Of a DNA stretch of 64,000 nt, positions 490 through 45,098 are shown in pieces. Source of the DNA: Mustelus asterias (Eukaryota); NCBI RefSeq assembly GCF_964213995.1, contig NW_027590144.1, forward strand, positions 1,116,001 through 1,180,000, given 5' to 3'. The position numbers and the translations under genes were made by a program. Numbering within the stretch: the first letter of the stretch is position 1; each line of letters begins with the position of its first letter. Under the pieces are notes generated by a model that was not told the DNA's origin, searched no databases, and saw nothing but the letters and a program-made list of their open reading frames with translations.

Positions 490-685
490 AAAGTGCAGGC
501 GCTGCCCCAGAGGAGGCACGTTTCAGGCCGTCTGAAGCTCAATTCTCATTCAGAAAGACCTCTTTTTAGGTCAAACCAAGTAAACAAACTCAAATTAAAT
601 CAGGACAAAGTAAAAGGGGCAGCTCCACAAAAAGGAGGGGGAACAGCCCGAACAGAAATCAAAATGCAAAGGAAACTTAAAAACA

Positions 686-3600
686 TCAAATTAAAATGTG
701 ATTATTAGGGTCAATAATGCACCCCAACCCCTGCGGTGCCCAGCGGGCGCGGAAAGCGTCAACCTCGCCCGTGGACACCGCATGCTCCCTCTCCAGGGAC
801 ACCTGGCCGTGAACGTAGCCGCGGTAGAGGGGAAGACAGTCAGGATGGACAGCCCCCTCGATCGCCCGCTGCCTGGACCGGTAAATGGCGCGTTTCGCCA
901 GGCCCAGGAGCAGGTTCACGAGGAGGTCGCCATCCCGACCCTCCCCTCTCCGCACCGGGTGTCCGTAGATCAGGAGCGTGGGACTGAAGTGCAAACAAAA
1001 CATCAATAAAAGGTTCTTCAGGAAAACATAAAGGGAGTGCAGCCTAAGACACTCAACATAGACATGGTCCACGGACTCCACAAGGCCACAGAAAGGGCAG
1101 TCTTCGGAGCCCGTGAACCAGTGAATCCTACGGTTGTGCGGAACTGCTGCATGCATCACCCTCCACCCCAGGTCCCCGACGTAATTGGGGGAGATCCCTC
1201 CGTAGAGGGACCTCCAGCGGGGACCTCCGCCGCCCGGCGGCAACAAGGCCCGCCAAGGTGTATCCGGGCGACAGGCGAGGAGGCGGTAGTGGAAGGTGTG
1301 CAGCAGCAGCCCGCACAGGAAACGCCTCCGCGCGGTAGAAAAAGGCACGGAGGGCATTTCCGCGAGGCGGCTCAGGCTGTGGGGCACCTCACCCAGGGGA
1401 GGGGGCTGAGGCTTTGGGCCAATGTGGAATTCCGCCCGAACAGGGGAACGCTCGGGCGGGATCCCACCGCACGCCTGTGCCGTCTCAAGTTTGCGTGCAG
1501 TTTCGGGGCCGAGCACGACCGTCCTAAGGTCTAGGATGGCTTTGGCCGCGCGCCGGACGGACGTCCCCGCGCGCTCAGCCAGCACGCGGGGACTCATCCA
1601 GCCCGCTCCTCCGCCATCGAGCACGTCCCCGATTCTGGTCACCCCGGCGTCCACAGCCCCCCTCTCCGCCAGCCACCTGAAGTTATACGGCTGGAGGAGC
1701 GGATTCCTGAGCAGCGGCTCTCGCACGAGAGCCGCTACTCCTGACGGGGGAGAGCTGCGTCGCGAGGCGACCTTGTTCCAGACAGTGAGGAGGTCCTGGT
1801 AAAAGACGGGCAACTCCTGCAGGGCGGTCGAAGCACGCCCCAGTTCGATATGCAGGAGCTGCACGTCATAATTGAGGCCGTGCCACTGGCGGAAGAAATA
1901 CGTCGCCATGGCACACCACTGTGGAGGGGGCTCAACGTAAAGGTACCTCTGCAGGGCCTGGAGGCGGAAGGTCGCTATCTGAGTGCGGAGGCACACCAGA
2001 CCTTGTCCGCCCTCCTCAAGCGGGAGATACAGGACCGCAGCAGGGACCCAGTGCAGTCGATTGCCCCAGAAGAACCGCACGAGGGTTCTCTGGATATCGG
2101 TGACAAAGCCAGGGGGAGGGGTCAAAGGGACCAGCCGGTACCACAGCATGGAGGCGACCAGCTGGTTTATGACTCGAGCTCGCGCCCCGTAGGACAGCAC
2201 TCGGAGCAGTCCTGTCCAGCGACCCAGGCGGGCGGAGACTTTGGCCTCCAGCTCCCGCCAGTTCGCCGGCCAGGATTCCTCGGCTGGGCAGAGATGGGCC
2301 CCCAAGTAGAGGAGGTTGGTCCTGCTCCAGGTGAAAGGCCTGAGCTCCTCCGGAAGGGGGTCCGTCTCCCAAGGACCGACAAGGAGTCCGGAGCACTTGG
2401 CCCAGTTGATCCTGGCGGAGGACGCGGCGGAGTACACCGCCTGGCATTCTCGCATCCTCCGCAGGTCAGCCGGGTCCGTGAACATGAGGAGCACGTCGTC
2501 GGCGTAAGCTGACAGGACCACCCCTACGTCCGGTCCGCGCAGGACCAAACCTGACAACCTCCTCCGCAAGAGGCGCAGGAATGGCTCCACGCATACGGAA
2601 TACAGTTGGCCGGACAAGGGGCAGCCCTGCCGTACTCCTCTCCCGAAGCGAAGGGGCGCCGTCAGGGACCCGTTAACCTTAATCAGACACTCTGCGGCAG
2701 AGTACAGTAATCGGATCCGGGCGACAAACTGCGTCCCGAACCCGAATGCCCGCAGAGTCCCGAGTAAATACTCGTGCTCCACCCTGTCGAACGCCTTCTC
2801 CTGATCTAATGACAAGAAGGCGCCCGACAGACCAGCCCTCTGGGTGTGATGGATTAGGTCCCGGACCAGGTGGAGATTGTCATGTATGCAACGGCCCGGG
2901 ACCGTGTAGGACTGGTCAGGGTGGATCAAGTGGTCCAGCACGGATCCAAGGCGTGAAGCCATAGCCCTGGCAAAGATTTTATAATCCGTGCTGAGGAGGG
3001 AGACCGGGCGCCAGTTCTTGAGCAGGTGGAGATCCCCCTTCTTGGGCAGCAGGGCAATGACGGCCCTGCGCCACGAAAGGGGCATCTCCCCGGTAGCGAC
3101 GCTCTCCCCCAGGACCCCCGCGTAGTCGCTCCCCAGGACGTCCCAGAACGCCCTGAAGAACTCTACTGTCAGCCCGTCCAGCCCAGGGGCCTTGCCCCGG
3201 CTGAGCCCATTTAGGGCGCCGGTCAGCTCGGCCATGGTGGTAGGGGCCTCGAGCCTGCCGACGCCCTCCGGGCTGACCTGCGGCAGGTCCTCCCACAGAA
3301 GTCTGCGGGCATCCTCGCTGGACGGATCCGGAGAGAAGAGCGAGGTGTAATACTCCCGGGCAATGGCCCGGATGCCCTCCGGATCCGAGACGGGGGAACC
3401 GTCGTCGGCCAGCAGCGTAAGGAGCTGCTGACGGTTAGCCCGCCCTCTTTCCAGCGAGTAGAAGAAGGGGGAGCCGCGGTCCAGGTCCACCCGGAACTGG
3501 AGCCGCGACCTCACGTACGCGCCGCGAGACCTGGCAAGCTGCAGGTCCCGCAGCGCGTCCTTCTTCTCCCTGTACTCCGAACGCAGGGCCGGGTCCGCGT

Positions 3601-4579
3601 CAGGCCGACTGAGACGTGCCTCCAGGTCGAGCACCTCCTTCTCCAACTCCTCGAGCCTGGATTTCCGCCTCTTTGTCGACCCCCTCGCGTACCCCTGACA
3701 GAAGGTACGGACGTGAGTCTTGCCCACATCCCACCAGAGCCTCAAGGAGGGGAAGCCTCCCCGCTTCCTTCTCCAGCCGGCCCAGAATCGACGGAACGAG
3801 TCCAGGAAGCGCTCGTCCTCCAGCAGCGTGTTGTTAAAGTGCCAGTACGCGGACCCCCGCCGGATGCGAGACGGCGCAAAGTCCGCCCACACCAGGCTGT
3901 GGTCCGTGCTCGACACCGGCCGCATGGAGACCGAGGACACGCCGGACACGTGCGCCTTCGAAATGTAAAGGCGGTCGAGCCTGGACGCTCCGACTCCAGG
4001 CCTCACGAAAGTGAAGGCGCTGGAGCCAGGATGGAGATGCCTCCAGACGTCCACCAAGTCGTGGGACCCGATCAGGTCCCGCAACTTCACCACCGCCGGA
4101 GTGCGCAGCCAGGGGCCGGTGCGGTCCCGTGCCTCGAGGAGGCAGTTGAAATCTCCCCCGAGGATAATGCATTCGCCCCCCGCGATGGTGTCGACGTGAG
4201 CGGACACTTTCTCGTAGAAAGTCGTTTGCTGCGGTCCAGCGGTCGGGGCGTAGACATTCAGCAAGTGAATGACCACGCCCCCCTCACGGACCGTCAAGTG
4301 CAGCAACCGGCCTGGCACCGGCTCCTTGACCCCCAAGATCTCCGGCTTATAACGCGGGGCCAACAAGATAGCCACCCCGCAAGAAGCGAGCGTGAGGTGG
4401 CTCATGTAGACCCCCCCTTGCCACTCCAGGAGCCATTGGGCTTCGTCTCCCGGAACGGTGTGGGTTTCCTGCAGGAAACACACCGCATACTTCCCGTCAC
4501 GGAGGACCGAGAAGTTCTGGAACCTGCGGTGTGGCTCACTGCTGCCGTTGATGTTGAGGCTGGCTATGGTCACCTTCAT
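686..4579 (-). CDS. Tx1 ORF2: APE endonuclease + reverse transcriptase + C-terminal CCHC (1297 aa)
   Basis: ASLNING, FLQETH, GGDFN, SRLDR, TDH (APE); PGLDG, WRPVSLL, DQEKAFD, RQGCPLS, AYADD, YLG (RT); CPFC-x8-H-x4-C. Confidence 0.97.
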   Translation of the reverse strand: MKVTIASLNINGSSEPHRRFQNFSVLRDGKYAVCFLQETHTVPGDEAQWLLEWQGGVYMSHLTLASCGVAILLAPRYKPEILGVKEPVPGRLLHLTVREGGVVIHLLNVYAPTAGPQQTTFYEKVSAHVDTIAGGECIILGGDFNCLLEARDRTGPWLRTPAVVKLRDLIGSHDLVDVWRHLHPGSSAFTFVRPGVGASRLDRLYISKAHVSGVSSVSMRPVSSTDHSLVWADFAPSRIRRGSAYWHFNNTLLEDERFLDSFRRFWAGWRRKRGGFPSLRLWWDVGKTHVRTFCQGYARGSTKRRKSRLEELEKEVLDLEARLSRPDADPALRSEYREKKDALRDLQLARSRGAYVRSRLQFRVDLDRGSPFFYSLERGRANRQQLLTLLADDGSPVSDPEGIRAIAREYYTSLFSPDPSSEDARRLLWEDLPQVSPEGVGRLEAPTTMAELTGALNGLSRGKAPGLDGLTVEFFRAFWDVLGSDYAGVLGESVATGEMPLSWRRAVIALLPKKGDLHLLKNWRPVSLLSTDYKIFARAMASRLGSVLDHLIHPDQSYTVPGRCIHDNLHLVRDLIHHTQRAGLSGAFLSLDQEKAFDRVEHEYLLGTLRAFGFGTQFVARIRLLYSAAECLIKVNGSLTAPLRFGRGVRQGCPLSGQLYSVCVEPFLRLLRRRLSGLVLRGPDVGVVLSAYADDVLLMFTDPADLRRMRECQAVYSAASSARINWAKCSGLLVGPWETDPLPEELRPFTWSRTNLLYLGAHLCPAEESWPANWRELEAKVSARLGRWTGLLRVLSYGARARVINQLVASMLWYRLVPLTPPPGFVTDIQRTLVRFFWGNRLHWVPAAVLYLPLEEGGQGLVCLRTQIATFRLQALQRYLYVEPPPQWCAMATYFFRQWHGLNYDVQLLHIELGRASTALQELPVFYQDLLTVWNKVASRRSSPPSGVAALVREPLLRNPLLQPYNFRWLAERGAVDAGVTRIGDVLDGGGAGWMSPRVLAERAGTSVRRAAKAILDLRTVVLGPETARKLETAQACGGIPPERSPVRAEFHIGPKPQPPPLGEVPHSLSRLAEMPSVPFSTARRRFLCGLLLHTFHYRLLACRPDTPWRALLPPGGGGPRWRSLYGGISPNYVGDLGWRVMHAAVPHNRRIHWFTGSEDCPFCGLVESVDHVYVECLRLHSLYVFLKNLLLMFCLHFSPTLLIYGHPVRRGEGRDGDLLVNLLLGLAKRAIYRSRQRAIEGAVHPDCLPLYRGYVHGQVSLEREHAVSTGEVDAFRARWAPQGLGCIIDPNNHILI

Positions 4580-4607
4580 GTCAGCAGCTTTGTGCCACCG
4601 TCACCAC

Positions 4608-6701
4608 TTAACTAGGTGTGTGGGGGGGCGCTGGCGCAATTCTCACCAGTCCACCCCCCACCTTTTCGAGCCTGTGGAGGAACCGCAGTACCCAGCGCCG
4701 CTCTATTTTCTCCAGGCCCGCGGAGGCATGCGAGCATGCCTTCACGGACCGGACGAGCTGCGCCAGGTCCGGCCAGCGGCCGAGGGCTAGCCGGATTATG
4801 TCGGAGCGACCGGAATGGCTACGGATAAAGACCCTGAGGTCCTTGGAGGGGATGAGGGACGACTCGGTGGGGGGCACGAGGGAGTCCCCCGCCTCGCTCT
4901 GGGCAGACTCTGAAAGTGTCCCCGTGCCCTCCACCGAGCCGCTGACCTCCTCAGGGCGGTCGCCCCTCGACTCCGAGTCCCCCGCCGCAGGACGTACGGC
5001 GGGCGGCACGGAGCCACCAACTAGCCCTAGCCCCTCCCCGATCCCACCCCCAGGATCGGTGGAGGAGGGGTTCCCCCCGGGCTCACCTTTCCCGGATTGC
5101 GGGCCCCCGTGCGGCGGCGGCCCAGCCGCCCCCTCCGCCCCAGACGCTTGGACACCCCCCAGGTCCGGTGTATCCTTCGGACTGAGGTTGGGGATGTCCA
5201 GCGTCCAAGGTCGGGACGGAGAGGACGAGTGGATCGTCTCTTCGCCACCGCCGCACGAGGACATGAACATTGGAGTGTCGCCCCAGTCCCCCGACAGACT
5301 GAAGAAGAACTCCGGGTTGTAACCGGCCGGGTGGAACGGAACCGTGGGGGCCCCGCTGCCACCCGGCCCCGGACACTCCTCGCCGGGGGACTGAGGCAAC
5401 ACATGCTTGGATTTACAGGGTGCCTTGCCCCCTTTTTTCTGGGGACAAGGCACAAAGACAGGTGGGGGCACGGCAGGAGATGACTCACAAGGGGGGAGGG
5501 GCACGCAGACCTCGAACTCTACGGTGCCCGAGGGGCCCCGCCTCTTTTTGTTAACCTGCCCTCGGGCAGGCGAGGCCCCTCGCCCTCCGCCCCTCTTCGC
5601 CTTGCCGCGCCCCCCCTGCTCTCCCGTCACTTCCCCCCGAGGTGGCGGCGTCGCCAGTTTTGCCGGCTCGGGGTCGCTTACCCCCCCATGCTCGGGCCCA
5701 TGATCCCGGGCGCCGGACCCAGCACGAGGCCCCGGAGAGCCCACGGGCCCGGCAGATGGTGGTGGTGGGGGGGGTGCGCAGGTGGAGACTGAGGCGGTCC
5801 CCGAGCCGGCTGCCGGGGTGGTTGGGGTGTTTTCCCTGGGGGCCGGGGTTCCGGTACCCCCCTTCTTTTTTGTAGGTCCTTTATGGGCCTTTTGGCCGCG
5901 CGGGGGCTCCGCTCCCCCCCCGCCGGCAGCTGAGGTGGCAGCTGCTGCCGGCGTGGCCTCCCCTCGCGGGGGGGCAGATGGTACTCGCTTGGGGGGAGAG
6001 GGGGCTGCGGTGCCAGCTGCGGCCGCCTTGGGTTGGTGGTCGGCGGCCTTGGAGACGGGGCAGTTTTTCCTCACGTGCCCCGCCTCCTTACAGGCATGGC
6101 ACCGCACACCGTCCGCGGACCAAAAGACCCGGTACGTGGTCCCCTCGTGGGGGACATTGAAACCTCCCTCCAGTTCCTCCTCCCGGGCCAGGCGGACAAA
6201 AACCTGGCGCCGGAAGGAGTATATGTGGCGGAGGGAGGGGTCCCGAAGGCCGAGCGGGATCGGCTGCACCCCGGACCTGACCTCCCCCAGTAGATGGAGG
6301 TGGGGGAGGAGGAGCTCACTCGGTAGGAAGGGCGGGACGTTCGATATTACTATCTTGTGGGCGGTGGCCTCCAAAGGGTCCACCGCCAGGAACGTCCCGC
6401 CCACCGTGAGCCCCTTTTCCAGGGCGAGGCGAACCGCCCGCTCGGCCTTCAGGAAGAATACGGCCCGGCCGTACATCTTTGAGGCCGCGACAATGGCTGA
6501 GGGGCCGACAACCCCAGCCATTGCCTTAACGCAGGCCTCGATAGACATGTCGGGGTGGGCGTAGCACTTCACCCCGAGCTGCCGCGTGATTAAAGAGAAT
6601 GGCGGCAGGGCCTTGGGAGCGGCGGGGGCTCTGGCAGCCGCCACGCCCGCATAGGTGGGCCGAGAAGGCCCTGCCACCGGCGACGCTGGTGATGTCGCCA
6701 T
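4608..6701 (-). CDS. Tx1 ORF1 nucleic-acid-binding protein with CCHC zinc knuckle (697 aa)
   Basis: Tx1-type N-terminal region (ASKMYGRAVFFL, ISNVPPFLP, SFRRQV), knuckle CHACKEAGHVRKNC, long Pro/Gly-rich C-terminus; immediately upstream of ORF2. Confidence 0.92.
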   Translation of the reverse strand: MATSPASPVAGPSRPTYAGVAAARAPAAPKALPPFSLITRQLGVKCYAHPDMSIEACVKAMAGVVGPSAIVAASKMYGRAVFFLKAERAVRLALEKGLTVGGTFLAVDPLEATAHKIVISNVPPFLPSELLLPHLHLLGEVRSGVQPIPLGLRDPSLRHIYSFRRQVFVRLAREEELEGGFNVPHEGTTYRVFWSADGVRCHACKEAGHVRKNCPVSKAADHQPKAAAAGTAAPSPPKRVPSAPPRGEATPAAAATSAAGGGGAEPPRGQKAHKGPTKKKGGTGTPAPRENTPTTPAAGSGTASVSTCAPPPPPPSAGPVGSPGPRAGSGARDHGPEHGGVSDPEPAKLATPPPRGEVTGEQGGRGKAKRGGGRGASPARGQVNKKRRGPSGTVEFEVCVPLPPCESSPAVPPPVFVPCPQKKGGKAPCKSKHVLPQSPGEECPGPGGSGAPTVPFHPAGYNPEFFFSLSGDWGDTPMFMSSCGGGEETIHSSSPSRPWTLDIPNLSPKDTPDLGGVQASGAEGAAGPPPHGGPQSGKGEPGGNPSSTDPGGGIGEGLGLVGGSVPPAVRPAAGDSESRGDRPEEVSGSVEGTGTLSESAQSEAGDSLVPPTESSLIPSKDLRVFIRSHSGRSDIIRLALGRWPDLAQLVRSVKACSHASAGLEKIERRWVLRFLHRLEKVGGGLVRIAPAPPHTPS

Positions 6702-7094
6702 TGTATCAGGGGAAGTGCTACACCCACCCCGAGACTGCCCAGATGCACGGCAGGGCGTATGTGGGATGGGGAAGATAAGGCAGGGTGGGGTAGGCGGGGA
6801 AGGGTGTAGGTGCTCTCTCCTCGGAGCGAGAGAGGGAGAGAGGAGGTTGGAGGAGCAGGAGGGAGATGAGGCACAAGGCCGGTGCCCCAGTCAGGAGGGA
6901 AAAGGGGAGGGGGTGCCGGTCCCGGGGGCAGCAGTAGTGGGTAGGGGAAATAGGAAAGGTCTTCACCCCCCCCCACTGCAGATGGAAAAGAGACAGTCCA
7001 AACGCCTTCGCCCCCCCCCCCTCTCCTCCAGTCACTCCCTGTCCTCTCTTCCTCCCCCCCCCCCCCGGGAGAGCGCACCCTCCAGAGGCCGGAT

Positions 7095-7270
7095 GGCAGG
7101 CAAGCAGGCAGTCAGGCAGTCCAGACGGCAGGCAGCCCAGACGGCAGGCAGGCAGGTAGGTAAGCAGGCCAGACGGCAGGCAGGCAGGTAAGCAGGCCAG
7201 ACGGCAGGCAGGCAGGTAAGCAGGCCAGACGGCAGGCAGGCAGGCAACAGGCAGGCCGGGCAAGGCAGGC
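7095..7270. repeat. GGCA-rich / 28-bp tandem repeat in the Tx1 5'UTR
   Basis: Same unit as 1-240, with fewer copies. Confidence 0.9.
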
Positions 7271-7420
7271 AGCAGCTCACCTCCCTCCTTCCTCCCCGCA
7301 GGGAGCCAAGAACAAACAAAACAAAACAAAACAAACAGAACCGGGCGTCTTCTTAAACAAACTGAAAAACAAAGTGTGTTACTCACAAACCAAACAAAAA
7401 AAAAGAAAGCAAGTCCAAAA

Positions 7421-7490
7421 GTTTCCGCCCGGCTCCGACCCGGGGCCCCCCGCTACTCGGGCGAACGTGAAACCACTTCACCCCGGAAAC
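7421..7490 (-). pseudogene. tRNA-Val-derived head of the full-length Tx1 copy
   Basis: RC GTTTCCGGGGTGAAGTGGTTTCACGTTCGCC...CCGGGCGGAAAC; acceptor stem GTTTCCG/CGGAAAC intact, B box mutated. Confidence 0.82.
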
Positions 7491-7555
7491 AAAGTGCAGG
7501 CGCTGCCCCAGAGGAGGCACGTTTCAGGCCGTCTGAAGCTCAATGTTCATTCAGA

Positions 7556-8063
7556 GAGAGAGAAGCAGCAGCAGCTTTGCTGGACAGGAATGAGCAGCTG
7601 AACAAGCTCATTGTCCACTTCCGCATTCAGACAATGAGGAGCTGTGATTGGCTGGAGGAGCCCAGACGTCCGGTCCCCCAGGGTTCCCATTGGTCAATGC
7701 CCCGCAGACAGACAATGAGGGGCGGAGCCCCACGTGGGGGTGGGCGGGACTTTGCCCTCCAGCCGCGCTGAGCTGTTGTCCAATGGGGCAGGCTGGAAGA
7801 CCCGGACAGACAATGGTCAGTGCGCCGGCTCTGTCCCGGGCCCCGCCCCACACCCGCACATTCCACATAACGCGCATCCTCCGAAATCCACACATGCTCA
7901 TTCCCCAAATTCCGCCAATGTGCCCAAATTCCGACTCACTGCCTCTCACCGTAGCCAATGGGAAGTGTTGGAACACCGGAAGGACTCTGGTCCTTGTGTG
8001 AATGAAGATTGAGCTTCAGACGGACTCAAACTTCCTCCTTAAAAGAGGCCAATATCTGTGAGT
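7556..8063. promoter_or_regulatory. Bidirectional ZNF promoter P1 and plus-strand non-coding exon 1 (donor GTGAGT at 8058)
   Basis: Several CCAAT/ATTGG boxes, GC boxes, CACGTG, ACTTCCG; homologous to 30750-31000 and 44800-44970; leader GAATGAA-ATTGAGCTTCAGAC present in both orientations. Confidence 0.65.
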
Positions 8064-8356
8064 AAAACACTTTCTATTCTTCCCCTTTCCATTTATTTTC
8101 TCATTCTGCGGGAAATTGGGGACTTGCAGCAACTGAAGGGAAAGGAAGTGAATCCAGGGAGGCTGCAGACTCTGGAAAGGTTGGTCCAGGTCTCTCTCTC
8201 TCTCTTAAAGACATTGACATCCTTTGCTCCCTCAGCTTGACACATTGATTTGTCTGGCTAAAAGGATGATCACTTTCCTAATGTTCCTTTCCTAATGTCC
8301 CTTTCCTAATGTTTCCCAGGAGATGACTGACATTTAAGGGGACAGTAAATTAATAT

Positions 8357-13927: not shown

Positions 13928-15106
13928 ATGGAGAAACCGTGGAAATGTGGGGACTGTGGGAAGGGATTCAGGCACCCATCTGCAGTGGAAACTCATCGAC
14001 GCAGTCACACTGGGGCGCAACCATTCAGCTGCTCTCAATGTGGGAAGGGATTCACTCAGTCATCCAGCCTGCAGAGACACCAGCGAGTTCACACTGGGGC
14101 GAGTATGTTTACATGCTCTCAGTGTGGGAAGGGATTCACTCAGTTCTCCAGCCTGCAGAGACACCAGCAAGTTCACACTGGGGAGAGGCCGTTCACCTGT
14201 TCTGACTGTGGGAAGGGATTCACTCGCTTATCCCACCTGCTGAGCCACTATCTCACTCACACCAATGAGAGACCCTTTAAATGCTCTGACTGTGGAAGCA
14301 GATTCAAAAGCTCTCGAGAACTGATTTCCCACCAGCGAGTTCACACTGGGGAGAGACCGTTCAGCTGCTGTGTGTGTGGGAAAGGATTTACTCAGTTATC
14401 CAACCTACTGACACACCAGCGAGTTCATACCGGGGAGAGGCCATTCACATGCTCTGTGTGTGGGAACAGTTATATTCACTTATCCAGCTTGCTAAGCCAC
14501 AAAGTCACTCACACCAATGAGAGACCCTTTAAATGTTCTGATTGTGGGAGTGGCTTCAAAAGCTCTGGAGAACTGATGTCCCACCAGCGCATTCACAGTG
14601 AGGAGAGACCGTTCAGCTGCTCTCACTGCACAAAGAGATTTAGAACGTCATCCAACCTGTGTGCACACCAGCGAGTTCACACTGGGGAGAGACCATTCAC
14701 CTGCTCTGAGTGTGGGAAGGGATTCACTCATTCATCCCATCTGCACAGACACAAAGGCTCTCACAGCAATGAGAGGCCCTTTAAATGCTCTGACTGTGGG
14801 AGTGGCTTCAAAAGTGCTGCGGATCTGTTGGACCACCAGCGCATTCACACTGAGGAGAGACCGTTCAGCTGCTCTCACTGCACAAAGAGGTTTAGAAGGT
14901 CATCCGCACTGCGGAGACACCAGCGAGTTCACACCGGGGAAAAACCATTTACATGCTCGGAATGTGGAAAGGGATTCACTGAGTTACGCAATCTACAGAC
15001 ACACCAGCTACTTCACACTGGGGAGAGGCCATTCACCTGCTCTGTGTGTGGAAACGGATTCACTCGGTCATCCCACCTACAGAGACACCAACAAATTCAC
15101 AAATGA
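13928..15106 (+). CDS. ZNF-A: tandem C2H2 zinc-finger protein, 14 fingers, no effector domain
   Basis: CxxC-x12-HxxxH repeats with TGERPF-type linkers; upstream small exon ~13305-13370 and acceptor TTTTACAG at 13563. Confidence 0.92.
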
Positions 15107-18171: not shown

Positions 18172-18894
18172 GTGTCTCAAAATAGGAAGGGCTTGGTGAA
18201 AGGTGTGAGAGGGGAGGGGAGTGGACAGTTAGAAGAAGGGTCACCTGTGGTTGTCCCACTCCAAAACAGGTACATTGTTTTAGATAGTGTGGAGGAGTGT
18301 GCCTCTCCAGGGGTAAGACACAGTGACCAGGTCACTGGCACACAGTCAGGCTCTGTGGCCCGGAAAGGGAAGAGAGGGGTTAGGAGAGCGATAGTGGTGG
18401 GGGATGCGTCAGTTAGAGGGACAGACAGGCGATTCTGTGGGGGCGAACGGGACTCCAGGATGGTAGTCTGCCTACCTGGTGCTGGGGTCACGGATGTCTC
18501 CGAGCGGATAGGAGGCATTTTAAAAGGGGAAGATAAAGAAACGGATGTCATTATACACATTGGTGGAAATGACGTAGATAGGAAGAGTAGGGGGGTCCTA
18601 AGGGAGCAATTCAGGGAGTTGGGAAATAGGTTAAAAAGTAGGGTCACTAGGGTGGCCATCTCTGGGCTGCTCCCAATGCCTCGTGCCAGTGAGGATAAGA
18701 ATAGGGAGTTGGTTCAAATGAATGCCTGGCTAAAGGACTGGTCCAGGAGGGAGGGCTTTATTTTCATAGACCAATGGGAGGTTTTCAGGAGAGGATGGCA
18801 CCTGTACAAGAGGGAGGGGTCACAACGAAGTTGGAAGGGCACAAATATCCTGGCTGGGAGCTTTGCTAATGCAGTTCGGGGGGGTTTAAACTAG
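18172..18894 (+). CDS. CR1 ORF1 C-terminal SGNH esterase-like domain (5' truncated)
   Basis: VVGDAS, CLPGA, IHIGGND and ISGLLP motifs typical of CR1 ORF1 esterase. Confidence 0.8.
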   Translation: MSQNRKGLVKGVRGEGSGQLEEGSPVVVPLQNRYIVLDSVEECASPGVRHSDQVTGTQSGSVARKGKRGVRRAIVVGDASVRGTDRRFCGGERDSRMVVCLPGAGVTDVSERIGGILKGEDKETDVIIHIGGNDVDRKSRGVLREQFRELGNRLKSRVTRVAISGLLPMPRASEDKNRELVQMNAWLKDWSRREGFIFIDQWEVFRRGWHLYKREGSQRSWKGTNILAGSFANAVRGGLN

Positions 18895-21818
18895 TGTGGC
18901 AGGGGGGTGGGGATCAAACTATTAGGTCTATAAGTGTGGTGGCTGGGGACGAGCTTGGGGCTGGGACAAGGCTGGCAAAGAAGAAGAGCACTCTGGGGGA
19001 GGACGACCTCACTGAGCCTGGGGGTCTGGAGTGCTTATACTTCAATGCAAGGAGCGTAGCAGGTAAAACAGACGAACTTGGGGCCTTAATGCGCACGAGG
19101 AATTTGGATGTGGTTGCGGTGACGGAGACTTGGTTGAAAGAGGGACAGGACTGGCAGCTGAATATTCCAGGGTACAAGTGTTTTAGACGAGACAGAGGAG
19201 GGGCCAAAAGAGGTGGGGGAGTAGCGGTATTGGTTGGAGAGCATATTACAGCGGTGCAGAGGGAGGACAATTCAGAGGAGTCGTGTAGCGAGTCACTCTG
19301 GGTGGAGCTTAGAAACAGGAAAGGCGCAGTCACTATGTTGGGGGTGTACTACAGGCCCCCCAACAGCCCAAGGGAAGTGGAAGAATGGATATGTCAGGAG
19401 ATACTGGATAGGTGCAGGAAATATAGGGTTGTTGTAGTGGGAGACTTCAATTTCCCTGGTATAGACTGGAAATCGCTGAGGGCAGGGACTCTGGATGGTG
19501 AGGCATTTGTAAAATGTGTACAGGAGGGTTCGTTGGAACAATATGTGGACAGCCCAACTAGAGAGGGGGCTATACTGGACCTGGTGCTGGGGAATGAACC
19601 CGGTCAGGTCTTCAAAGTTTTGGTCGGGGAACATGTGGCAAATAGTGACCACAATTCTGTTAGCTTTAGGATAGTGATGGAAAAGGATGAGTGGTGTCCC
19701 AAGGGTAAGGTGTTGGATTGGGGGAAGGCTAACTTTATTGGGATCAGGCAGAAATTGGCAGCTCTTGATTGGGAGAGGCTGTTTGAGGGTAAATCCACAT
19801 CTGGTATGTGGCAGTCTTTTAAGGAACGGTTGTTAGGGCTACAGGACAAGCATGTGCCTGTAAAAAAGAAGGATAGGAAGGGTAGGATTAGAGAACCGTG
19901 GATAACCAGGGAAATTGAGGGACTGGTCAAAAGGAAAAGAGAGGCGTATGTTAGGTCCAAGCAGCTAAAAACGGAGGGAGCTCTGGAGGAGTATAATGAA
20001 AGTAGGAAAATACTCAAACGGGGAATTAGAAGAGCAAAAAGGGGTCACGAAATGTTCTTGGCAGACAGGATTAAGGAGAATCCCAAGGCATTTTATTCAT
20101 ACGTTAGGAACAAAAGGGTTGTAAGGGAAAAAATCGGACCTCTCAGGGACAAAAGTGGGGACTTATGCTTGGAGCCCAAAGAGGTAGGGGAGATCCTAAA
20201 TGAATACTTTGCGTCGGTATTCACTAAGGAGAGGGATGTGTTGACTGGGAGTGTCTCGGAGGGGAGTGTTGAACCGTTGGAGAAAATCTCCATTACAAAG
20301 GAGGAAGTGTTAGGTTTGTTAGAGAATATAAAGACTGACAAATCCCCAGGGCCTGATGGAATCTATCCAAGGCTGCTCAGGGAGACGAGAGGTGAAATAG
20401 TTGGGCCTCTGACGCAAATCTTTGACTCGTCACTGGACACAGGTGAGGTCCCAGAGGATTGGAGGATAGCCAATGTGGTCCCGTTATTTAAGAAGGGTAG
20501 GAAGGATAACCCGGGTAATTATAGGCCGGTGAGCTTGACGTCCGTGGTGGGGAAGTTGTTGGAGAAGATTCTTAAAGATAGGATGTATGCGCATTTAGAA
20601 AGGAATAAACTCATTAACGATAGTCAACATGGTTTTGTGAGAGGGAGGTCATGCCTCACGAACCTGGTGGTGTTTTTTGAAGAAGTGACCAAAATGGTTG
20701 ACGAAGGAAGGGCCGTGGATGTTGTCTATATGGACTTTAGTAAAGCGTTTGACAAAGTCCCTCATGGTAGGCTAGTGAAAAAGGTTGGATCCCATGGGAT
20801 AAAGGGGGAGGTGGCTAGATGGGTGGAGAACTGGCTTGGTCATAGAAGACAGAGGGTGGTAGTGGAAGGGTCTTTTTCCGGCTGGAGGCCTGTGACTAGT
20901 GGTGTACCGCAGGGCTCTGTATTGGGACCTCTGCTGTTTGTGATTTATATAAATGATCTGGAAGAAGGAGTAACTGGGGTGATCAGTAAGTTTGCGGACG
21001 ACAAAAAACTGGCAGGACTTGCAGATAGTGAGGAACATTGTCAGAGGCTACAGAAGGATATAGATAGGCTGGAAATTTGGGCAAGGAAATGGCAGATGGA
21101 GTTCAATCCTGATAAATGCGAAGTGATGCATTTTGGTGGGAATAATGTAGGGAGGAGCTACACGATAAATGGAAGAACCATAAAGGGTGTAGAGACGCAG
21201 AGGGACCTGGGTGTGCAAGTCCACAGATCTTTGAAGGTGACGTCACAGGTGGAGAAGGTGGTGAAGAAGGCATATGGCATGCTTGCCTTTATAGGACGGG
21301 GCATAGAGTATAAAAGTTGGGGTCTGATGTTGCAGATGTATAGAACGTTGGTTCGGCCGCATTTGGAATACTGCGTCCAGTTCTGGTCGCCACACTACCA
21401 GAAGGACGTGGAGGCTTTGGAGAGAGTACAGAGGAGGTTTACCAGGATGTTGCCTGGTATGGAGGGGCTTGGTTATGAGGAGAGATTGGGGAAACTGGGG
21501 TTGTTCTCCTTGGAAAGACGGAGGATGAGGGGAGACTTAATAGAGGTGTATAAAATTATGAAAGGCATAGATAGGGTGAACGGTGGGAAGCTTTTCCCCG
21601 GGTCGGTGGTGACGTTCACGAGGGGTCATAGGTTCAAGGTGAAGGGGGGGAGATTTAACACAGATATCAGAAGGACATATTTCACACAGAGGGTCGTGGG
21701 GGCCTGGAATGTGTTGCCGGGCAAGGTGGTGGAGGCGGACACACTGGGAACGTTTAAGACTTATCTAGACAGCTATATGAACGGAGTGGGAATGGAGGGA
21801 TACAAAAGAGTGATCTAG
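18894..21818 (+). CDS. CR1 ORF2: APE endonuclease + reverse transcriptase (974 aa, open)
   Basis: YFNARS, VTETW, YYRPP, GDFN, SDH; PGPDG, DFSKAFD, PQGSVLGP, FADD; starts at a GTG overlapping the ORF1 stop. Confidence 0.95.
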   Translation: MWQGGGDQTIRSISVVAGDELGAGTRLAKKKSTLGEDDLTEPGGLECLYFNARSVAGKTDELGALMRTRNLDVVAVTETWLKEGQDWQLNIPGYKCFRRDRGGAKRGGGVAVLVGEHITAVQREDNSEESCSESLWVELRNRKGAVTMLGVYYRPPNSPREVEEWICQEILDRCRKYRVVVVGDFNFPGIDWKSLRAGTLDGEAFVKCVQEGSLEQYVDSPTREGAILDLVLGNEPGQVFKVLVGEHVANSDHNSVSFRIVMEKDEWCPKGKVLDWGKANFIGIRQKLAALDWERLFEGKSTSGMWQSFKERLLGLQDKHVPVKKKDRKGRIREPWITREIEGLVKRKREAYVRSKQLKTEGALEEYNESRKILKRGIRRAKRGHEMFLADRIKENPKAFYSYVRNKRVVREKIGPLRDKSGDLCLEPKEVGEILNEYFASVFTKERDVLTGSVSEGSVEPLEKISITKEEVLGLLENIKTDKSPGPDGIYPRLLRETRGEIVGPLTQIFDSSLDTGEVPEDWRIANVVPLFKKGRKDNPGNYRPVSLTSVVGKLLEKILKDRMYAHLERNKLINDSQHGFVRGRSCLTNLVVFFEEVTKMVDEGRAVDVVYMDFSKAFDKVPHGRLVKKVGSHGIKGEVARWVENWLGHRRQRVVVEGSFSGWRPVTSGVPQGSVLGPLLFVIYINDLEEGVTGVISKFADDKKLAGLADSEEHCQRLQKDIDRLEIWARKWQMEFNPDKCEVMHFGGNNVGRSYTINGRTIKGVETQRDLGVQVHRSLKVTSQVEKVVKKAYGMLAFIGRGIEYKSWGLMLQMYRTLVRPHLEYCVQFWSPHYQKDVEALERVQRRFTRMLPGMEGLGYEERLGKLGLFSLERRRMRGDLIEVYKIMKGIDRVNGGKLFPGSVVTFTRGHRFKVKGGRFNTDIRRTYFTQRVVGAWNVLPGKVVEADTLGTFKTYLDSYMNGVGMEGYKRVI

Positions 21819-28845: not shown

Positions 28846-29511
28846 TCACTCGTGAACTTGTTGGTGTCTCAACAGGTGGGATGAAACTCTGAATCCCTTC
28901 CCAAAGGTGAATGGCCTGTCTTCAGTGTGAACTCGCTGGTGTCTCTGCAAGTCAGATGATTGAGTGAATCCCTTCCCACACTGAGAGCAGGTGAACGGTC
29001 TTTTCCCAGTGTGAAACTGCTGGTGTCTGTTCAGGTCGGATGACTGAGGAAATCCCTTCCCACACTGAGAGCAGGTGAATGGCCTCTCCCCAGTGTGAAC
29101 TCGCTGGTGTGACTGCAGGTGAGATGACCGAGTGAATCCCTTCCCACACTGAGAGCAGGTGAATGGCCTCTCCCCAGTGTGAACTCGCTGGTGTACCCGC
29201 AGGTCAGATGACCAAGTGAATCCTTTCCCACACTGAGAGCAGGTGAATGGCCTCTCCCCTGTGTGAACTCGCTCGTGTGTCCGCAGGTCAGATGGCCAAG
29301 GGAATCCCTTCCCACACTGAGAGCAGATGTACGGCCTCTCCCCAGTGTGAACTCGCTCGTGTGTCCGCAGGCCGGATAACTGAGTGAATCCCTTCTCACA
29401 CTGAGAGCAGGTGAACGGCCTCTCCCCAGTGTGGCTGCGCCGATGAGCTTCCAGCAGGGATGGGGCTCTGTATCCCTTCCCACAGTCTGCACATTTCCAT
29501 GGTTTCTCCAT
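28846..29511 (-). CDS. ZNF-B: C2H2 zinc-finger protein, 7 fingers plus a last finger lacking CxxC
   Basis: MEKPWKC start shared with paralogs; homogeneous [10 protein letters not shown] fingers. Confidence 0.88.
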
Positions 29512-30283
29512 GGTGCAAGTGTCCTTGCCTCTCGCTTGGGTGGACAATCAGTTGAAGCCTCGTCCTCACACAGAACATGTATACAGTCTCTCTCCGCTGT
29601 GAATGGTGTGATATTTATTCAGGCTGTGTAACTGGTTAAAGCTCTTTAGACAGTGCACTGGAACACTCTCACTCGACTGTGGCAGTGTGTTTGTGCTTTT
29701 CGAATCACACTGATATTTGAATTCTTTTCAAATCAACAGACCAGACAATCATTTCTCCTTCTGGATCCAACAGCCGATGATATTCATGTCCCAGGGAATA
29801 TGACTCTGTTAGATCTGGACATGATGTATGAGATTTCAGCCTGTGATTCCTCTTTCAATATCCTGTAAAACGAGTTTACAAAAGGTATCATTGTCAGTAC
29901 AGGTTAGAAATTTAGAGGCCAATTCTAATTTCTGTGGAACATTCTTTCCTCTCTCATTCCCCAAAAGCTGTGAATCTCCATCCCACACACTCTCCCTCCA
30001 TTCTCACACTGCTGTATCTAATATGCACCCTCCCAATTCTCCTGAAGGTGCTGATTGAGGCTGATTGACAGATCCATGCTCACTGCTTCCTGTCCTGGAC
30101 ACAGGGAGCTGAAAATCATCAAGCTGACAACCATGTTAAAGTTTTACATTTGGACATAAGTGAGCAGATTGATGATGTATGTATTACCTGGTTACAGATA
30201 TGAAGAATGTGAGGAGGATTATTATTTTGGCAGCGAGTGGTGACTTGGAAGTTAAAAATTGAAGCCCAGAGTTTCGTACTCCT

Positions 30284-30572
30284 CACAGCACCAGGGACCC
30301 GGTTCAATTCCCGGCTTGGGTCACTGTCTGTGTGGAGTTTGCACGTTCTCCCCATGTCTGCGTGGGTTTCCTCCGGGTGCTCCGGTTTCCTCCCACAAGT
30401 CCAAAGATGTGCGGGTTCGGTGGATTGGCCATGATAAATTGCCCCTTAGTGTCAGGAGGATTAGCAAAGTAAATATGTGGGGTTACAGGAATAAGGCCTG
30501 GATGTGATTGTGGTCGGTGCAGACCTGATGGGCCGAATGGCCTCCTTCTGCACTGTCGGGATTTTATTCTAT
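30284..30572 (+). mobile_element. HE1/V-SINE-like SINE, 5' truncated, in ZNF-B intron 1
   Basis: Paralogous to 15306-15634. Confidence 0.85.
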
Positions 30573-30629
30573 GAATGAGAAAAGCAATGGAAAGGGGGAG
30601 AAAAGAAAGTGTTTTACTCACAGATGTTG

Positions 30630-30733
30630 CCTCTTTTCAGGCCAAACCAAATAAACAAACTGAAGTTAAATCAGTAAACAGACTAGACAGTGCAAAGTTA
30701 CTGCCGTGACTCGGATTCGAACCGAGGTTGCTG
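30630..30733 (-). mobile_element. Candidate Tx1-mobilised SINE: tRNA-His 3' half (30702-30733) + spacer + Tx1-like 3' tail (30630-30674)
   Basis: RC CAGCAACCTCGGTTCGAATCCGAGTCACGGCA matches the 3' 32 nt of vertebrate tRNA-His-GTG; tail is 40/45 identical to the Tx1 terminus at 559-603. Confidence 0.75.
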
Positions 30734-31190
30734 GAGGAAGTTTGAGTCTGTCTGAAGCTGAATCTTCACTCAGAGGGAGAGGAGCAGAACCAACAACAAT
30801 GAAGGAAGCTTCACGCAGCCATTAACACAAGGCCCGGTCTCCGATTGGCTGAAGGACCAGCACCCATCCGGTCCTCCACGGGTTACCATTGGTCAATCCG
30901 CCGCATGTGGACAATGAGGGGGCGGAACCCGAGCCCACGTGGGGGTGGGCGGGGCTTTGCCCGCCAGCCGCGCTGAGCTGGTGTCCAATCCGCAGTATGC
31001 TCCTTCTGTAACCAGTGATATTGCTGCCAATGGGACACTGTGTGCTGGGAACGCCCCTCTGAGTCATTGTGACGGCACAATGGAGCCCTGTCTGAATCAG
31101 CCAATAGCAATCACTCTGCTCCGCGGTGACGTCTCCGGGTTCAGGCGTGCGGACCCGGGAGCCCCGCCCCCACCCATTGTTCCCCCAGTC
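30734..31190. promoter_or_regulatory. Bidirectional ZNF promoter P2 (between ZNF-B and ZNF-C)
   Basis: CCAAT, GC boxes and CACGTG block homologous to 7640-7790. Confidence 0.65.
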
Positions 31191-31539: not shown

Positions 31540-32108
31540 TGTCCAGGACAGGAAGCAGTGAGCATGGATCTGTCAATCAGCCTCAATCAGCACCTTCAGG
31601 AGAATTGGGAGGGTGAATATTAGATACAGCAGAGTGAGAATGGAGGGAGAATGTGTGGGATGGAGATTCACAGCTTTTGGGGAATGAGAGAGGAAAGAAT
31701 GCTCCATAGAAACTAGAATTGTCTGTTCTGAATTTCTGTCCTGCTCTGACAATGGTGAATTTTGTAAACTTCTTTCACAGGATATCAGAAGATGACAGTT
31801 TACAGACAGAAATCTTAAACCAAACTTCACATCAATATCTGACAGAGTCACTCAATTCATCCGGACCTGAATACCTTTGAATCTAGAAGGAGAAATGTTT
31901 CTCTGTTCTGTCTGCTTCAGAAGATTTTAAACATCAGTTTGGCTGGAAAAGCACCGACACACATAAACACACCCGAGTGAGAGTGTTCCAGTGCACTGTG
32001 TGGAACCAACAGTTACACAGCCTGAAAAAAACATTGCAGCATTCAGAGCAGGGAGATTGTACCCGTGTTGTATTGATGCATGAGGAAAGATACAAGGAGA
32101 CCCACACC

Positions 32109-33287
32109 ATGGAGAAACCGTGGAAATGTGGGGATTGTGGAAAGGGATTCATGTCCCCATCCGAGCTGGAGATTAATCGACGCAATCACACTGGGGAGAA
32201 GCCATTCACCTGCTCTGTGTGTGGGAAGGGATTCATTCATTCATCCCACCTGCTGAGGCATAAAGTCATTCACACCCTGGACAGACCCTTTAAATGCTCT
32301 GACTGTGGGAGTGAATTCAAAAGCTCTGGAAAACTGGTGTCCCACCAGCACATTCACACTGAAGAGAGACCATTCAGCTGCTCTCACTGCTCAAAGAGGT
32401 TTAAAACATCATCCAACCTGCGAATACACCAGCGAGTTCACTCCAGGGAGAGACCGTTTACCTGCTCTGAGTGTGGGAAGGGATTCACTGCTTCATCCTA
32501 CCTGCTAAGACACAAAGTCACTCACACCAATGAGAGACCCTTTAAATGCTCTGACTGTGGGAGCGGCTTCAAAAGGTCTCGGGAACTGATGGCACACCAG
32601 CGCATTCACACTGAGGACAGACCATTCACCTGCGCTCAGTGTGGAAAGGGATTCACTCAGTTATCCGCACTGCAGCTACACCAGCGAACTCATACTGGGG
32701 AGAAGCCGTTCACCTGCTCTGTGTGTGGGAAGGGATTCACTCGGTCACACAGCCTGATAAAACACAATCTCACTCACACCAATGAGAAACCCTTTAAATG
32801 CTCTGACTGTGGGAGTGGCTTCAAACGTGCTGAGAATCTGATGTCCCACCAGCGCATTCACACTGAGGAGAGACTGTTCAGCTGCTCTCACTGCACAAAG
32901 AGGTTTAAATGGTCAAACGGCCTGCGGGAACACCAGCGAGTTCACACTGGGGAGAGACCGTTCACCTGCTCTGTGTGTGGGAAGGGATTCACTCAGTCAT
33001 CCGCCCTGCTGAAACACAAAGTCACCCACACCCAGGAGAGACCCTTTAAATGTTCTGACTGTGGAAGTGGTTTCAAAAGTTCTCGGGCACTGATGTCCCA
33101 CCAACGCACCCACACTGAGGAGAGACCATTCAGCTGCCCTCACTGCACAAAGAGGTTTAGAAGGTCATCCCACCTTCAGAAACATGAGCGAATTCACACT
33201 GGGGACAGGCCATTCACCTGCTCTGTGTGTGGGAAGGGATTCATTCAGTCATCTCACCTGCTGAAACACCAGCGAGTTCACAAGTGA
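32109..33287 (+). CDS. ZNF-C: C2H2 zinc-finger protein, 14 finger units (first has His->Asn)
   Basis: 392 aa from the shared MEKPWKC start; the reading frame is open further upstream to 31977. Confidence 0.92.
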   Translation: MEKPWKCGDCGKGFMSPSELEINRRNHTGEKPFTCSVCGKGFIHSSHLLRHKVIHTLDRPFKCSDCGSEFKSSGKLVSHQHIHTEERPFSCSHCSKRFKTSSNLRIHQRVHSRERPFTCSECGKGFTASSYLLRHKVTHTNERPFKCSDCGSGFKRSRELMAHQRIHTEDRPFTCAQCGKGFTQLSALQLHQRTHTGEKPFTCSVCGKGFTRSHSLIKHNLTHTNEKPFKCSDCGSGFKRAENLMSHQRIHTEERLFSCSHCTKRFKWSNGLREHQRVHTGERPFTCSVCGKGFTQSSALLKHKVTHTQERPFKCSDCGSGFKSSRALMSHQRTHTEERPFSCPHCTKRFRRSSHLQKHERIHTGDRPFTCSVCGKGFIQSSHLLKHQRVHK

Positions 33288-44772: not shown

Positions 44773-45098
44773 CTCACAGATGTCGGAGAGACAGGAGGAA
44801 GTTTGAGCCTGTCTGAAGCTCAATGTTCATTCAGAGAGGGAGCAGCAGCAACTTTGCTGGGCAGGAATGAGCAACTGAACAAGCTCATTGTCCACTTCCG
44901 CATTCAGACAATGGGGAGCTCTGATTGGCTGGAGGACCAGAGTCCTTCCGGTCCTCCAACTCCCCCATTGGTCAGCACCTCAGCATAAGGACCAGGGGGT
45001 GGGCACTCTACCGCACGTGCGCAGCTTCCCCTCTCCCTTGGACATGCGCAGCCCTGGGCCTTGGGGGAGTGGACAGAGTACAACTTCCTCCTGTGAGT
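44773..45098. promoter_or_regulatory. Bidirectional ZNF promoter P3 with both exon-1 ends uninterrupted (donors 44778 minus, 45093 plus)
   Basis: 44810-44940 is nearly identical to 7530-7660 and serves as the empty-site reference. Confidence 0.7.

What the first reader, a model, noticed from the sequence alone, without database searches (positions are those of the whole stretch)
30630..30733. Candidate new SINE: tRNA-His head + Tx1 3' tail at the same ZNF exon-1 site
Seen: a 104-bp segment absent from P3, placed between CTTCCTCC and CAACATCT|GTGAGT. It has 32 nt matching the 3' half of tRNA-His (intact B box GGTTCGAATCC), a ~27-nt spacer, and 45 nt that are 40/45 identical to the extreme 3' end of the Tx1 (559-603, ending AAAAGAGG). 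Known: SINEs commonly borrow the 3' tail of their partner LINE; Tx1-dependent SINEs are rare (crocodilian SINEU). Inference: a 5'-truncated copy of a site-specific non-autonomous partner, or a one-off Tx1-to-pre-tRNA template switch.
Basis: partly seen in the sequence, partly recalled or inferred. Interest (0 to 1): 0.88.

Follow-up and report, generated by a model that had tools for sequence, protein, structure and literature searches.

The report
Tx1–tRNA chimeric insert in ZNF exon
A 104-base insert in the non-coding first exon of a shark-type zinc-finger gene joins the end of a tRNA, with a short trailer, to the last 45 bases of a site-specific Tx1 retrotransposon; it is most likely a one-off product of that retrotransposon's copying enzyme and is not yet shown to belong to a new SINE family.

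Summary
On the minus strand, between the exon-1 motif CTTCCTCC and CAACATCT|GTGAGT, lies a ~104-nt insert. It has a tRNA 3' part (T-arm plus acceptor 3' strand, no CCA), a ~27-nt spacer, and 45 nt that are 40/45 identical to the 3' end of an intact LINE at 559-7513. That LINE belongs to the Tx1 clade: its ORF2 is 49% identical over its full length to Xenopus Tx1.

The insert is absent from 4 of 4 other Tx1-free exon-1 paralogs in the window. One of these carries only a 9-10-nt Tx1-end stub at the same spot, in a non-sister paralog. The Tx1 machinery therefore made the insert at its own target site.

The window holds one copy, and that copy lacks the A-box half.

Unchecked notes from elsewhere in this genome report pre-tRNA-Arg, tRNA-Gly and SINE-head chimeras with Tx1 tails, so the scan has seen similar things on other DNA.

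Best reading: a sporadic template-switch chimera (~0.52). A true SINE or proto-SINE stands at ~0.25.

The parts
30741..30790 (-). Host ZNF exon-1 leader upstream of the insert. It runs into the CTTCCTCC motif that ends at the 5' junction.
   Evidence: Homologous to the leaders at 7990-8038(+), 44794-44842(-) and 7518-7566(-). The promoter upstream aligns with paralogs c (146/196) and e (134/161).
30702..30733 (-). tRNA 3' part: end of the anticodon stem, variable loop, T-arm with B box, acceptor 3' strand and discriminator, no CCA. The assignment to tRNA-His is recalled, not tested. The first 1-3 nt are ambiguous with the host.
   Evidence: Read by eye. ARAGORN found 0 tRNAs and Rfam at gathering score found 0 matches. 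No search was possible.
30675..30701 (-). Spacer of about 27 nt with no run of four T. Its last bases before the tail are TTT(A). Read as the 3' trailer of a Pol III primary transcript (inference).
   Evidence: sequence. No match in the window or in the Tx1 3' UTR for the 20 usable nt.
30630..30674 (-). Tx1 3' tail, 45 nt ending AAAAGAGG, 40/45 identical to the end of Tx1 A.
   Evidence: No stable fold: MFE -4.1 kcal/mol, and 174 of 200 shuffles fold at least as well.
30616..30629 (-). Host exon-1 end CAACATCT plus the GTGAGT splice donor, kept intact downstream of the insert.
   Evidence: The same donor context is present in paralogs a, b, c and d.
559..7513 (-). Full-length Tx1-clade LINE 'A': 5' UTR with a 28-bp tandem repeat, ORF1 4608-6701, ORF2 686-4579 (APE + RT), and a 127-nt 3' UTR ending at 559. 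It is preceded by an exon-1-type leader and followed head-to-tail by copy B (1-511 plus its leader 512-558).
8039..8049 (+). Stub of 9-10 nt matching the Tx1 3' end (…AAAAGAGG). It sits at the same position of another exon 1, directly before C-CAATATCT-GTGAGT, where paralogs c and d have GTCTCT(C).
   Evidence: 0 of 100 shuffles gave a match; the 8-mer occurs only 7 times on both strands of the window. The promoter of this paralog is not homologous to the focal one beyond the leader (29/32 only).

Best explanation
The insert is a sporadic chimeric retrocopy made by the resident site-specific Tx1 LINE.

Shown: the Tx1 machinery acts at this exon-1 spot. Of 6 host exon-1 sites in the window, one holds two full-length copies, one holds a 9-10-nt stub and one holds this insert. 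The 3' 45 nt of the insert are a Tx1 3' end.

Inferred:
- The Tx1 endonuclease nicked the bottom strand just upstream of C(A/G)ACATCT.
- Reverse transcription started on the 3' end of a Tx1 RNA from a subfamily about 11% different from copy A.
- After 45 nt the enzyme moved to the 3' end of an unprocessed Pol III transcript, a pre-tRNA still carrying a trailer of about 26 nt that ends in U's. It copied the trailer and the 3' third of the tRNA, then stopped in the anticodon stem.
- The cDNA was joined to the upstream break right after CTTCCTCC through 1-3 nt of microhomology. About 7-8 bp of target (the GTCTCTC seen in paralogs c and d) were lost, and no target-site duplication formed.

The splice donor survived, so the insert would simply lengthen the 5' UTR exon.
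For: (1) The tail is 40/45 identical to the extreme 3' end of an intact Tx1-clade LINE in the same window.

(2) The right-hand boundary, AAAAGAGG followed by C(C)AA(C/T)ATCT-GTGAGT, is the same as that of the stub at 8039-8049. That stub lies in a paralog whose promoter is unrelated beyond the leader, so the two are independent events.

(3) Both full-length copies carry the exon-1-type leader ending CCTCCTC directly 5' of their body. This parallels the left-hand boundary of the insert.

(4) Empty paralogs c and d show what was replaced.

(5) There is no CCA, and a non-tRNA, non-Tx1 spacer ends in TTT at the junction. This is what a jump onto the oligo-U 3' end of a nascent Pol III transcript predicts.

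(6) A LINE family sharing the 3' terminus exists. This is Kojima's criterion for chimeras as opposed to SINEs (PMC4494074 section 19).

(7) tRNA/LINE-1 chimeras are documented in primates: 21 loci (bioRxiv 10.1101/2025.02.02.635956, passages).

(8) Unchecked notes from other windows of this genome report Tx1 tails fused to pre-tRNA-Arg, tRNA-Gly and a SINE head. Heterogeneous heads fit sporadic switching.
Against: - The copy number in the genome is unknown. I could not run the decisive count.
- The tail differs from copy A at 5 of 45 positions, while the tRNA part looks unchanged (by recall). The source was therefore not copy A's subfamily, and a SINE lineage with its own tail would explain this equally well.
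- There is no run of four T anywhere in the spacer or tail, so a full-length version could be transcribed by Pol III.
- The source tRNA gene and its real trailer were not seen, so 'trailer' is an inference.
- No 3' junction of a full-length Tx1 with host DNA lies inside the window. The target boundaries rest on the stub, the leaders and the paralogs.
- The notes from other windows are unchecked AI notes.
Confidence: 0.52

Rival explanations
1. The insert is a 5'-truncated copy of a genuine non-autonomous family: a tRNA-His-headed SINE or proto-SINE with a Tx1-derived 3' tail. Pol III would transcribe it from a master copy, and Tx1 would carry it in trans to the same ZNF exon-1 target.
For: The architecture is that of a canonical SINE: a tRNA part, a short body and the partner LINE's 3' end. 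The spacer and tail hold no run of four T. The tail has diverged 11% from the resident intact LINE while the tRNA part looks intact. The target is shared with the LINE, which is the argument used for SINEU/Tx1-Mar (PMC4494074). Tx1-mobilised short elements are often 5'-truncated (same paper, section 17 passage). An unchecked note reports a 'non-autonomous partner' at exon-1 donor sites elsewhere in the genome.
Against: Only 1 copy lies in 64 kb that holds 6 target sites. This copy lacks the A-box half and cannot be a source gene. A tRNA part identical to the tRNA (by recall) with a trailer-like spacer ending in T's looks like a fresh capture, not an evolved SINE body. The other chimeras noted in this genome have different heads. 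No paper on such a SINE turned up in the searches, where I looked at listings only.
Confidence: 0.25
2. The RNA was already chimeric before reverse transcription. One route is a read-through Pol III transcript from a tRNA-His gene that happens to have a Tx1 3' stub about 27 nt downstream. Another is an RNA-ligase product. That single RNA was then retrotransposed by Tx1 without any template switch.
For: The two parts have the same orientation. No run of four T lies between the tRNA end and the Tx1 end, so Pol III could read through. RNA ligation before retrotransposition is on record for U6/L1 (PMC6789731, seen in the search listing and the start of its abstract only).
Against: This Tx1 is site-specific for ZNF exon 1, so a stub right behind a tRNA gene would be an off-target event. 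A pre-tRNA 3' end is not the usual substrate of that ligase (recalled knowledge). No such source locus has been seen.
Confidence: 0.1
3. DNA-level repair. After an abortive 45-nt reverse transcription at the Tx1 nick, the break was sealed by end joining that captured a stray genomic DNA fragment from a tRNA-His locus (gene end plus flank).
For: The target deletion and short microhomology at the 5' junction are typical of end joining. A 9-10-nt abortive stub at another paralog shows that aborted events are repaired here.
Against: Both parts have the same orientation, and the captured piece ends in T's exactly at the junction, which fits an RNA 3' end better than a random DNA break. Filler captures of this kind are rare (recalled knowledge).
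Confidence: 0.08
4. There was no insertion. The segment would be ancestral exon-1 sequence lost from the other paralogs, and the similarity to Tx1 would exist because Tx1 carries host-derived sequence.
For: Tx1 copies here do carry an exon-1-type leader at their 5' end. One other paralog has the last 9-10 nt.
Against: 0 of 4 other Tx1-free sites have the 45-nt tail. Paralogs c and d share GTCTCT at that place instead. The closest promoter relatives of the focal gene (c and e) lack the segment. A tRNA fragment plus trailer is not expected in an ancestral 5' UTR.
Confidence: 0.03

Closest known systems
LINE-1 chimeric retrocopies with small Pol III RNAs (U6/L1; tRNA/L1)
   Same: A small RNA copy is fused 5' to a 5'-truncated LINE 3' end. 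The two are inserted as one event with the LINE's insertion hallmarks. The accepted explanation is a template switch during target-primed reverse transcription or a prior RNA ligation (PMC4494074 section 19; bioRxiv 10.1101/2025.02.02.635956 passages).
   Different: Here the LINE is a site-specific Tx1-clade element without a poly(A) tail. The event shows a small target deletion instead of a duplication. The tRNA piece is the 3' part, in sense orientation, and still carries a trailer. The 21 primate tRNA/L1 chimeras are mostly 5' halves in antisense orientation.
tRNA-derived SINEs with a LINE-derived 3' tail
   Same: The order of parts is the same: tRNA-related region, short body, then the partner LINE's 3' end (PMC3747384, passage of section 1.4; PMC4494074 introduction).
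   Different: This copy has no A-box half. Multiple copies have not been shown. The tRNA part looks undiverged, and the 'body' is only about 27 nt and looks like a gene trailer.
SINEU mobilised by Tx1-Mar in crocodilians (Kojima 2015, PMC4494074)
   Same: These are short retroposons that depend on Tx1-clade LINEs and share the LINE's target. Their heads were added by template switch onto small RNAs, and some Tx1 families themselves carry small-RNA heads.
   Different: SINEU heads come from U1/U2 snRNA, not tRNA. SINEU elements end in poly(A) and share no 3' terminus with any LINE. Their target is a Mariner transposon, not a gene's first exon.

Membership tests
tRNA-derived SINE | Head with an internal Pol III promoter (A and B boxes) | tested here: not met
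   Only the 3' part of the tRNA, with the B box, is present in this copy. The A-box half is missing (read). Whether full-length relatives exist is unknown.
tRNA-derived SINE | 3' tail shared with a partner LINE | tested here: met
   40/45 identity to the 3' end of the intact Tx1 at 559-603.
tRNA-derived SINE | Many dispersed copies from independent insertions | not testable with these tools
LINE-mediated chimeric retrocopy (template switch) | A small-RNA copy and a 5'-truncated LINE 3' end fused in one orientation, with the small RNA on the 5' side | tested here: met
   Order and orientation read. Tail alignment.
LINE-mediated chimeric retrocopy (template switch) | The whole chimera is bounded by the LINE's own insertion hallmarks | tested here: met
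   The 3' boundary is the same as that of the independent Tx1-end stub at 8039-8049. The 5' boundary falls after the motif that precedes both full-length Tx1 bodies. The replaced target is seen in paralogs c and d. Caveat: no host 3' junction of a full-length copy lies in the window.
LINE-mediated chimeric retrocopy (template switch) | The junction lies at the true 3' end of the captured RNA | tested here: inconclusive
   The spacer ends in TTT(A) at the junction, as a Pol III transcript would. The source gene and its terminator were not available.
Tx1 clade of non-LTR retrotransposons (the partner LINE) | ORF2 with APE endonuclease and RT, closest to Tx1-type elements | tested here: met
   Pfam Exo_endo_phos 5.2e-13 and RVT_1 2.3e-37. 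49% identity over 100% of 1297 aa to the X. laevis Tx1 149 kDa protein, P0005. No RT phylogeny was built.
Tx1 clade of non-LTR retrotransposons (the partner LINE) | Target-specific insertion | tested here: inconclusive
   3 of 6 exon-1 sites in the window bear Tx1 signatures at one spot. The sample is small. Wider support comes only from unchecked notes.
LTR-retroelement primer-binding site (tRNA-His primer) | About 18 nt complementary to the tRNA 3' end including CCA, next to an LTR end | tested here: not met
   There is no complement of CCA. The match runs about 31 nt through the T-loop. No LTR is adjacent (read).

The most novel reading that the evidence does not exclude
This is a truncated copy of a real, young, site-specific SINE (or proto-SINE). 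It would have a tRNA-His head, a gene-trailer body and a Tx1-derived 3' tail, and it would home to the first exon of ZNF genes together with its Tx1 partner. That would be the first tRNA-headed SINE with a Tx1 tail. It would also be a live snapshot of SINE birth by capture of a Pol III primary transcript.
Probability: 0.25. Interest if true: 0.75.

Novelty: new variant of a known kind. Interest (0 to 1): 0.42.

Why it matters
tRNA-derived SINEs are thought to arise when a LINE reverse transcriptase joins a Pol III transcript to its own 3' end. Fresh intermediates of that step are rarely seen.

This locus shows that junction in undiverged form: a tRNA end, an apparent trailer and a LINE tail. 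It was made by a Tx1-clade element that homes to the first exon of a large zinc-finger gene family.

If the unchecked notes of similar chimeras with other tRNAs in this genome hold up, this Tx1 lineage captures pre-tRNAs unusually often. It would then be a natural system for studying how SINEs are born.

If only this copy exists, it is an ordinary chimeric retrocopy in an unusual LINE clade. Either way the insert sits in a 5' UTR exon with the splice donor preserved, so it probably alters the leader of one ZNF transcript and nothing more.

Tried and rejected
Copy number in reads: the look-up of sequencing runs listed 23 runs, and the best held 0.50 of the 82 sampled words.

Metagenome scan of the spacer/tail junction: 0 hits. 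This is uninformative, because the collection is not expected to hold this animal.

Findings search by sequence: blank.

Does the spacer continue the Tx1 3' UTR? No significant similarity.

Does the tail form a conserved stem-loop? No. The MFE is -4.1 kcal/mol for the focal tail and -4.5 kcal/mol for the Tx1 A tail, and 174 and 119 of 200 shuffles fold at least as well.

Is the tRNA-Val-like module in the Tx1 5' UTR (note s1-893613) evidence of earlier tRNA capture? Rfam at E<=1 found nothing in 7300-7620 and ARAGORN found nothing, so I do not use it.

Primer-binding-site reading: rejected, because there is no CCA complement, the match is about 31 nt and no LTR is adjacent.

Common ancestry of the stub at 8039-8049 and the focal insert: rejected, because the two promoters are homologous only over the ~30-nt leader.

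Literature: the searches gave no paper on a Tx1-tailed tRNA SINE or on Tx1 in shark ZNF exons, judged from listings only. Supplements of Kojima 2015 and of the 2025 preprint were not opened. They could hold tRNA chimera details that bear on the comparison.

Full report
WHAT IS THERE. The window is a cluster of C2H2 zinc-finger genes: the ORFs at 13928-15106, 31977-33287 and 28846-29547 are full of zf-C2H2 repeats. The genes have short, conserved, apparently non-coding first exons that end in a GTGAGTAAA(A/G)CAC donor.

The finding lies on the minus strand. In gene sense the order is:
- host leader ending in CTTCCTCC;
- an insert of 103-104 nt;
- CAACATCT;
- GTGAGT.

The insert has three parts.
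- A tRNA 3' part of about 31-32 nt. It has a T-arm with a 5-bp stem and a 7-nt loop that fit the B-box consensus, then the acceptor 3' strand and discriminator, and no CCA. I read this by eye.
- A spacer of about 27 nt.
- A tail of 45 nt ending AAAAGAGG.

CHECK OF THE OBSERVATION. The tail aligns without gaps to 559-603 with 40 of 45 identities (E 2e-11). The 20 spacer nucleotides I could still use have no other match in the window. They have no significant similarity to the rest of the LINE's 3' UTR (69.5% of 1000 shuffles score at least as high).

ARAGORN called no tRNA in the window and Rfam at gathering score gave no match, as expected for a third of a tRNA. The isotype, His, is my recall of the vertebrate tRNA-His sequence and not a tool result.

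THE PARTNER LINE. 559-7513 (minus strand) is a full-length element.
- ORF1 is 697 aa with no Pfam family.
- ORF2 is 1297 aa with Exo_endo_phos (5.2e-13) and RVT_1 (2.3e-37).
- The 3' UTR is 127 nt with no poly(A).

ORF2 is 49% identical over 100% of its length to the Xenopus laevis 'Transposon TX1 149 kDa protein' (P0005). That search scored 8000 candidates, and 395 of them had E<=1e-20. The Tx1-clade label is therefore supported, although I built no RT tree.

A second copy, B, follows head-to-tail and runs off the window start. Between the two copies lies a 47-nt copy of the exon-1 leader. The same leader precedes copy A, and in both cases it ends CCTCCTC directly before the Tx1-specific sequence.

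THE TARGET SITE. The window holds six host exon-1 sites.
- Three are empty. Site c (44801-) reads CTTCCTCC|TGTCTCTCCGACATCT|GTGAGT. Site d (10373+) reads …|AGTCTCT|GTGAGT. Site b (45084+) reads …|T|GTGAGT.
- Site e (7517-) holds Tx1 A and B.
- Site a (8031+) reads CTTCCTCC|TTAAAAGAGGC|CAATATCT|GTGAGT.
- The sixth is the focal site.

Site a therefore has only the last 9-10 nt of a Tx1 3' end, at the place where c and d have GTCTCT(C). It shares its right-hand boundary with the focal insert. The combined motif occurs once in the window and in none of 100 shuffles. The 8-mer alone occurs 7 times on both strands.

The promoter of the focal gene aligns with those of c (146/196) and e (134/161). It aligns with that of a only over the leader (29/32). 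The stub and the focal insert are therefore independent events and not a shared ancestral sequence.

In sum, 3 of 6 sites carry Tx1 signatures at one spot, and 0 of 4 other Tx1-free sites carry the 45-nt tail.

One caveat applies. No host 3' junction of a full-length Tx1 lies inside the window, so the exact nick positions are inferred.

HOW IT MOST LIKELY AROSE. Shown: the Tx1 3' end sits at a Tx1-used site, with no target duplication and about 7-8 bp of target replaced.

Inferred: target-primed reverse transcription began on a Tx1 RNA, and after 45 nt the enzyme continued on the 3' end of an unprocessed Pol III transcript. The evidence for a precursor rather than a mature tRNA is twofold: there is no CCA, and a spacer unrelated to both tRNA and Tx1 ends in TTT(A) at the junction, as a transcript terminated in a T-run would.

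Copying stopped in the anticodon stem. The cDNA was then joined right after CTTCCTCC. The first two inserted bases equal the two that follow the motif in paralog d, which suggests a short microhomology. End-to-end template jumping of non-LTR reverse transcriptases is established knowledge that I recall. It was not tested here.

SINE OR ONE-OFF. Points for a SINE:
- the architecture;
- the absence of any run of four T in the spacer and tail;
- the shared target;
- a tail 11% different from copy A beside a tRNA part that looks unchanged (by recall).

Points for a one-off:
- there is a single copy in 64 kb with six targets;
- the A-box half is lost;
- the spacer is undiverged and trailer-like;
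- a LINE family with the same 3' terminus is present. Kojima (PMC4494074, section 19, read) uses that situation to tell sums of chimeric retrocopies from true SINE families.

Unchecked notes from other windows of this same genome report a pre-tRNA-Arg fused to a Tx1-like tail (s1-893225), a tRNA-Gly chimera (s1-893251), a SINE-head/Tx1-tail chimera (s1-892065) and an 18-bp Tx1 stub (s1-891922). If true, the heads are heterogeneous, which fits sporadic switching. I could not check these notes and count them only as leads.

My odds are:
- sporadic template-switch chimera, 0.52;
- SINE or proto-SINE family member, 0.25;
- pre-formed chimeric RNA (read-through or ligation), 0.10;
- DNA filler capture, 0.08;
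- ancestral sequence, 0.03.

COMPARISON WITH WHAT IS KNOWN. The closest match is the LINE-1 chimeric retrocopy with a small RNA. tRNA/L1 chimeras (21 loci) were reported in primates, but mostly as antisense 5' halves (bioRxiv 10.1101/2025.02.02.635956, passages). This case is a sense 3' part with a trailer, made by a site-specific Tx1.

SINEU/Tx1-Mar (PMC4494074; abstract, passages and section 19) is the only Tx1-dependent SINE group that my searches found. It has snRNA heads and poly(A) tails and shares no 3' terminus with a LINE. A tRNA-headed, Tx1-tailed SINE would therefore be new. The general SINE/LINE tail rule is taken from PMC3747384 (passages).

WHAT COULD NOT BE DONE. The genome-wide copy count, the comparison of the spacer with real tRNA-His gene flanks and the search for the donor Tx1 subfamily therefore remain the decisive steps.

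VERDICT. The Tx1-mediated origin is well supported. I score interest at 0.42 and novelty as a new variant of a known kind (LINE-mediated chimeric retrocopy).

Noticed in passing
window 8039-8049 (+): A stub of 9-10 nt matching a Tx1 3' end sits alone at the same exon-1 spot of another ZNF paralog. It looks like an aborted Tx1 insertion repaired through a CCT microhomology.
   Followed up: yes
window 505-603 and 7510-7575 (-): Tx1 copy B starts with a 47-nt copy of the host exon-1 leader, beginning where the host leader begins. Copy A has one leader only. This suggests that full-length Tx1 RNA starts at the ZNF exon-1 transcription start, and that 5' joining goes through homology.
   Followed up: partly
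Rfam at E<=1 and ARAGORN find nothing there.
   Followed up: partly
window 30270-30560 (+): The intron just downstream of the focal exon holds a SINE-like repeat with a tRNA-like head and a widely conserved core. The name 'Deu-type' is recalled only. It probably accounts for much of the 0.33-0.50 word share of low-coverage runs.
   Followed up: no
window 1-269 and 7147-7272: A 28-bp tandem repeat in the Tx1 5' UTR differs in copy number between the two adjacent copies: 9.6 versus 4.5 units.
   Followed up: no
window 18894-21818 (+) and 8334-9869 (-): Two further reverse-transcriptase ORFs lie in the window. One has APE + RT (974 aa) and the other RT only (511 aa). They were not classified, and their ends show no similarity to the spacer.
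   Followed up: no
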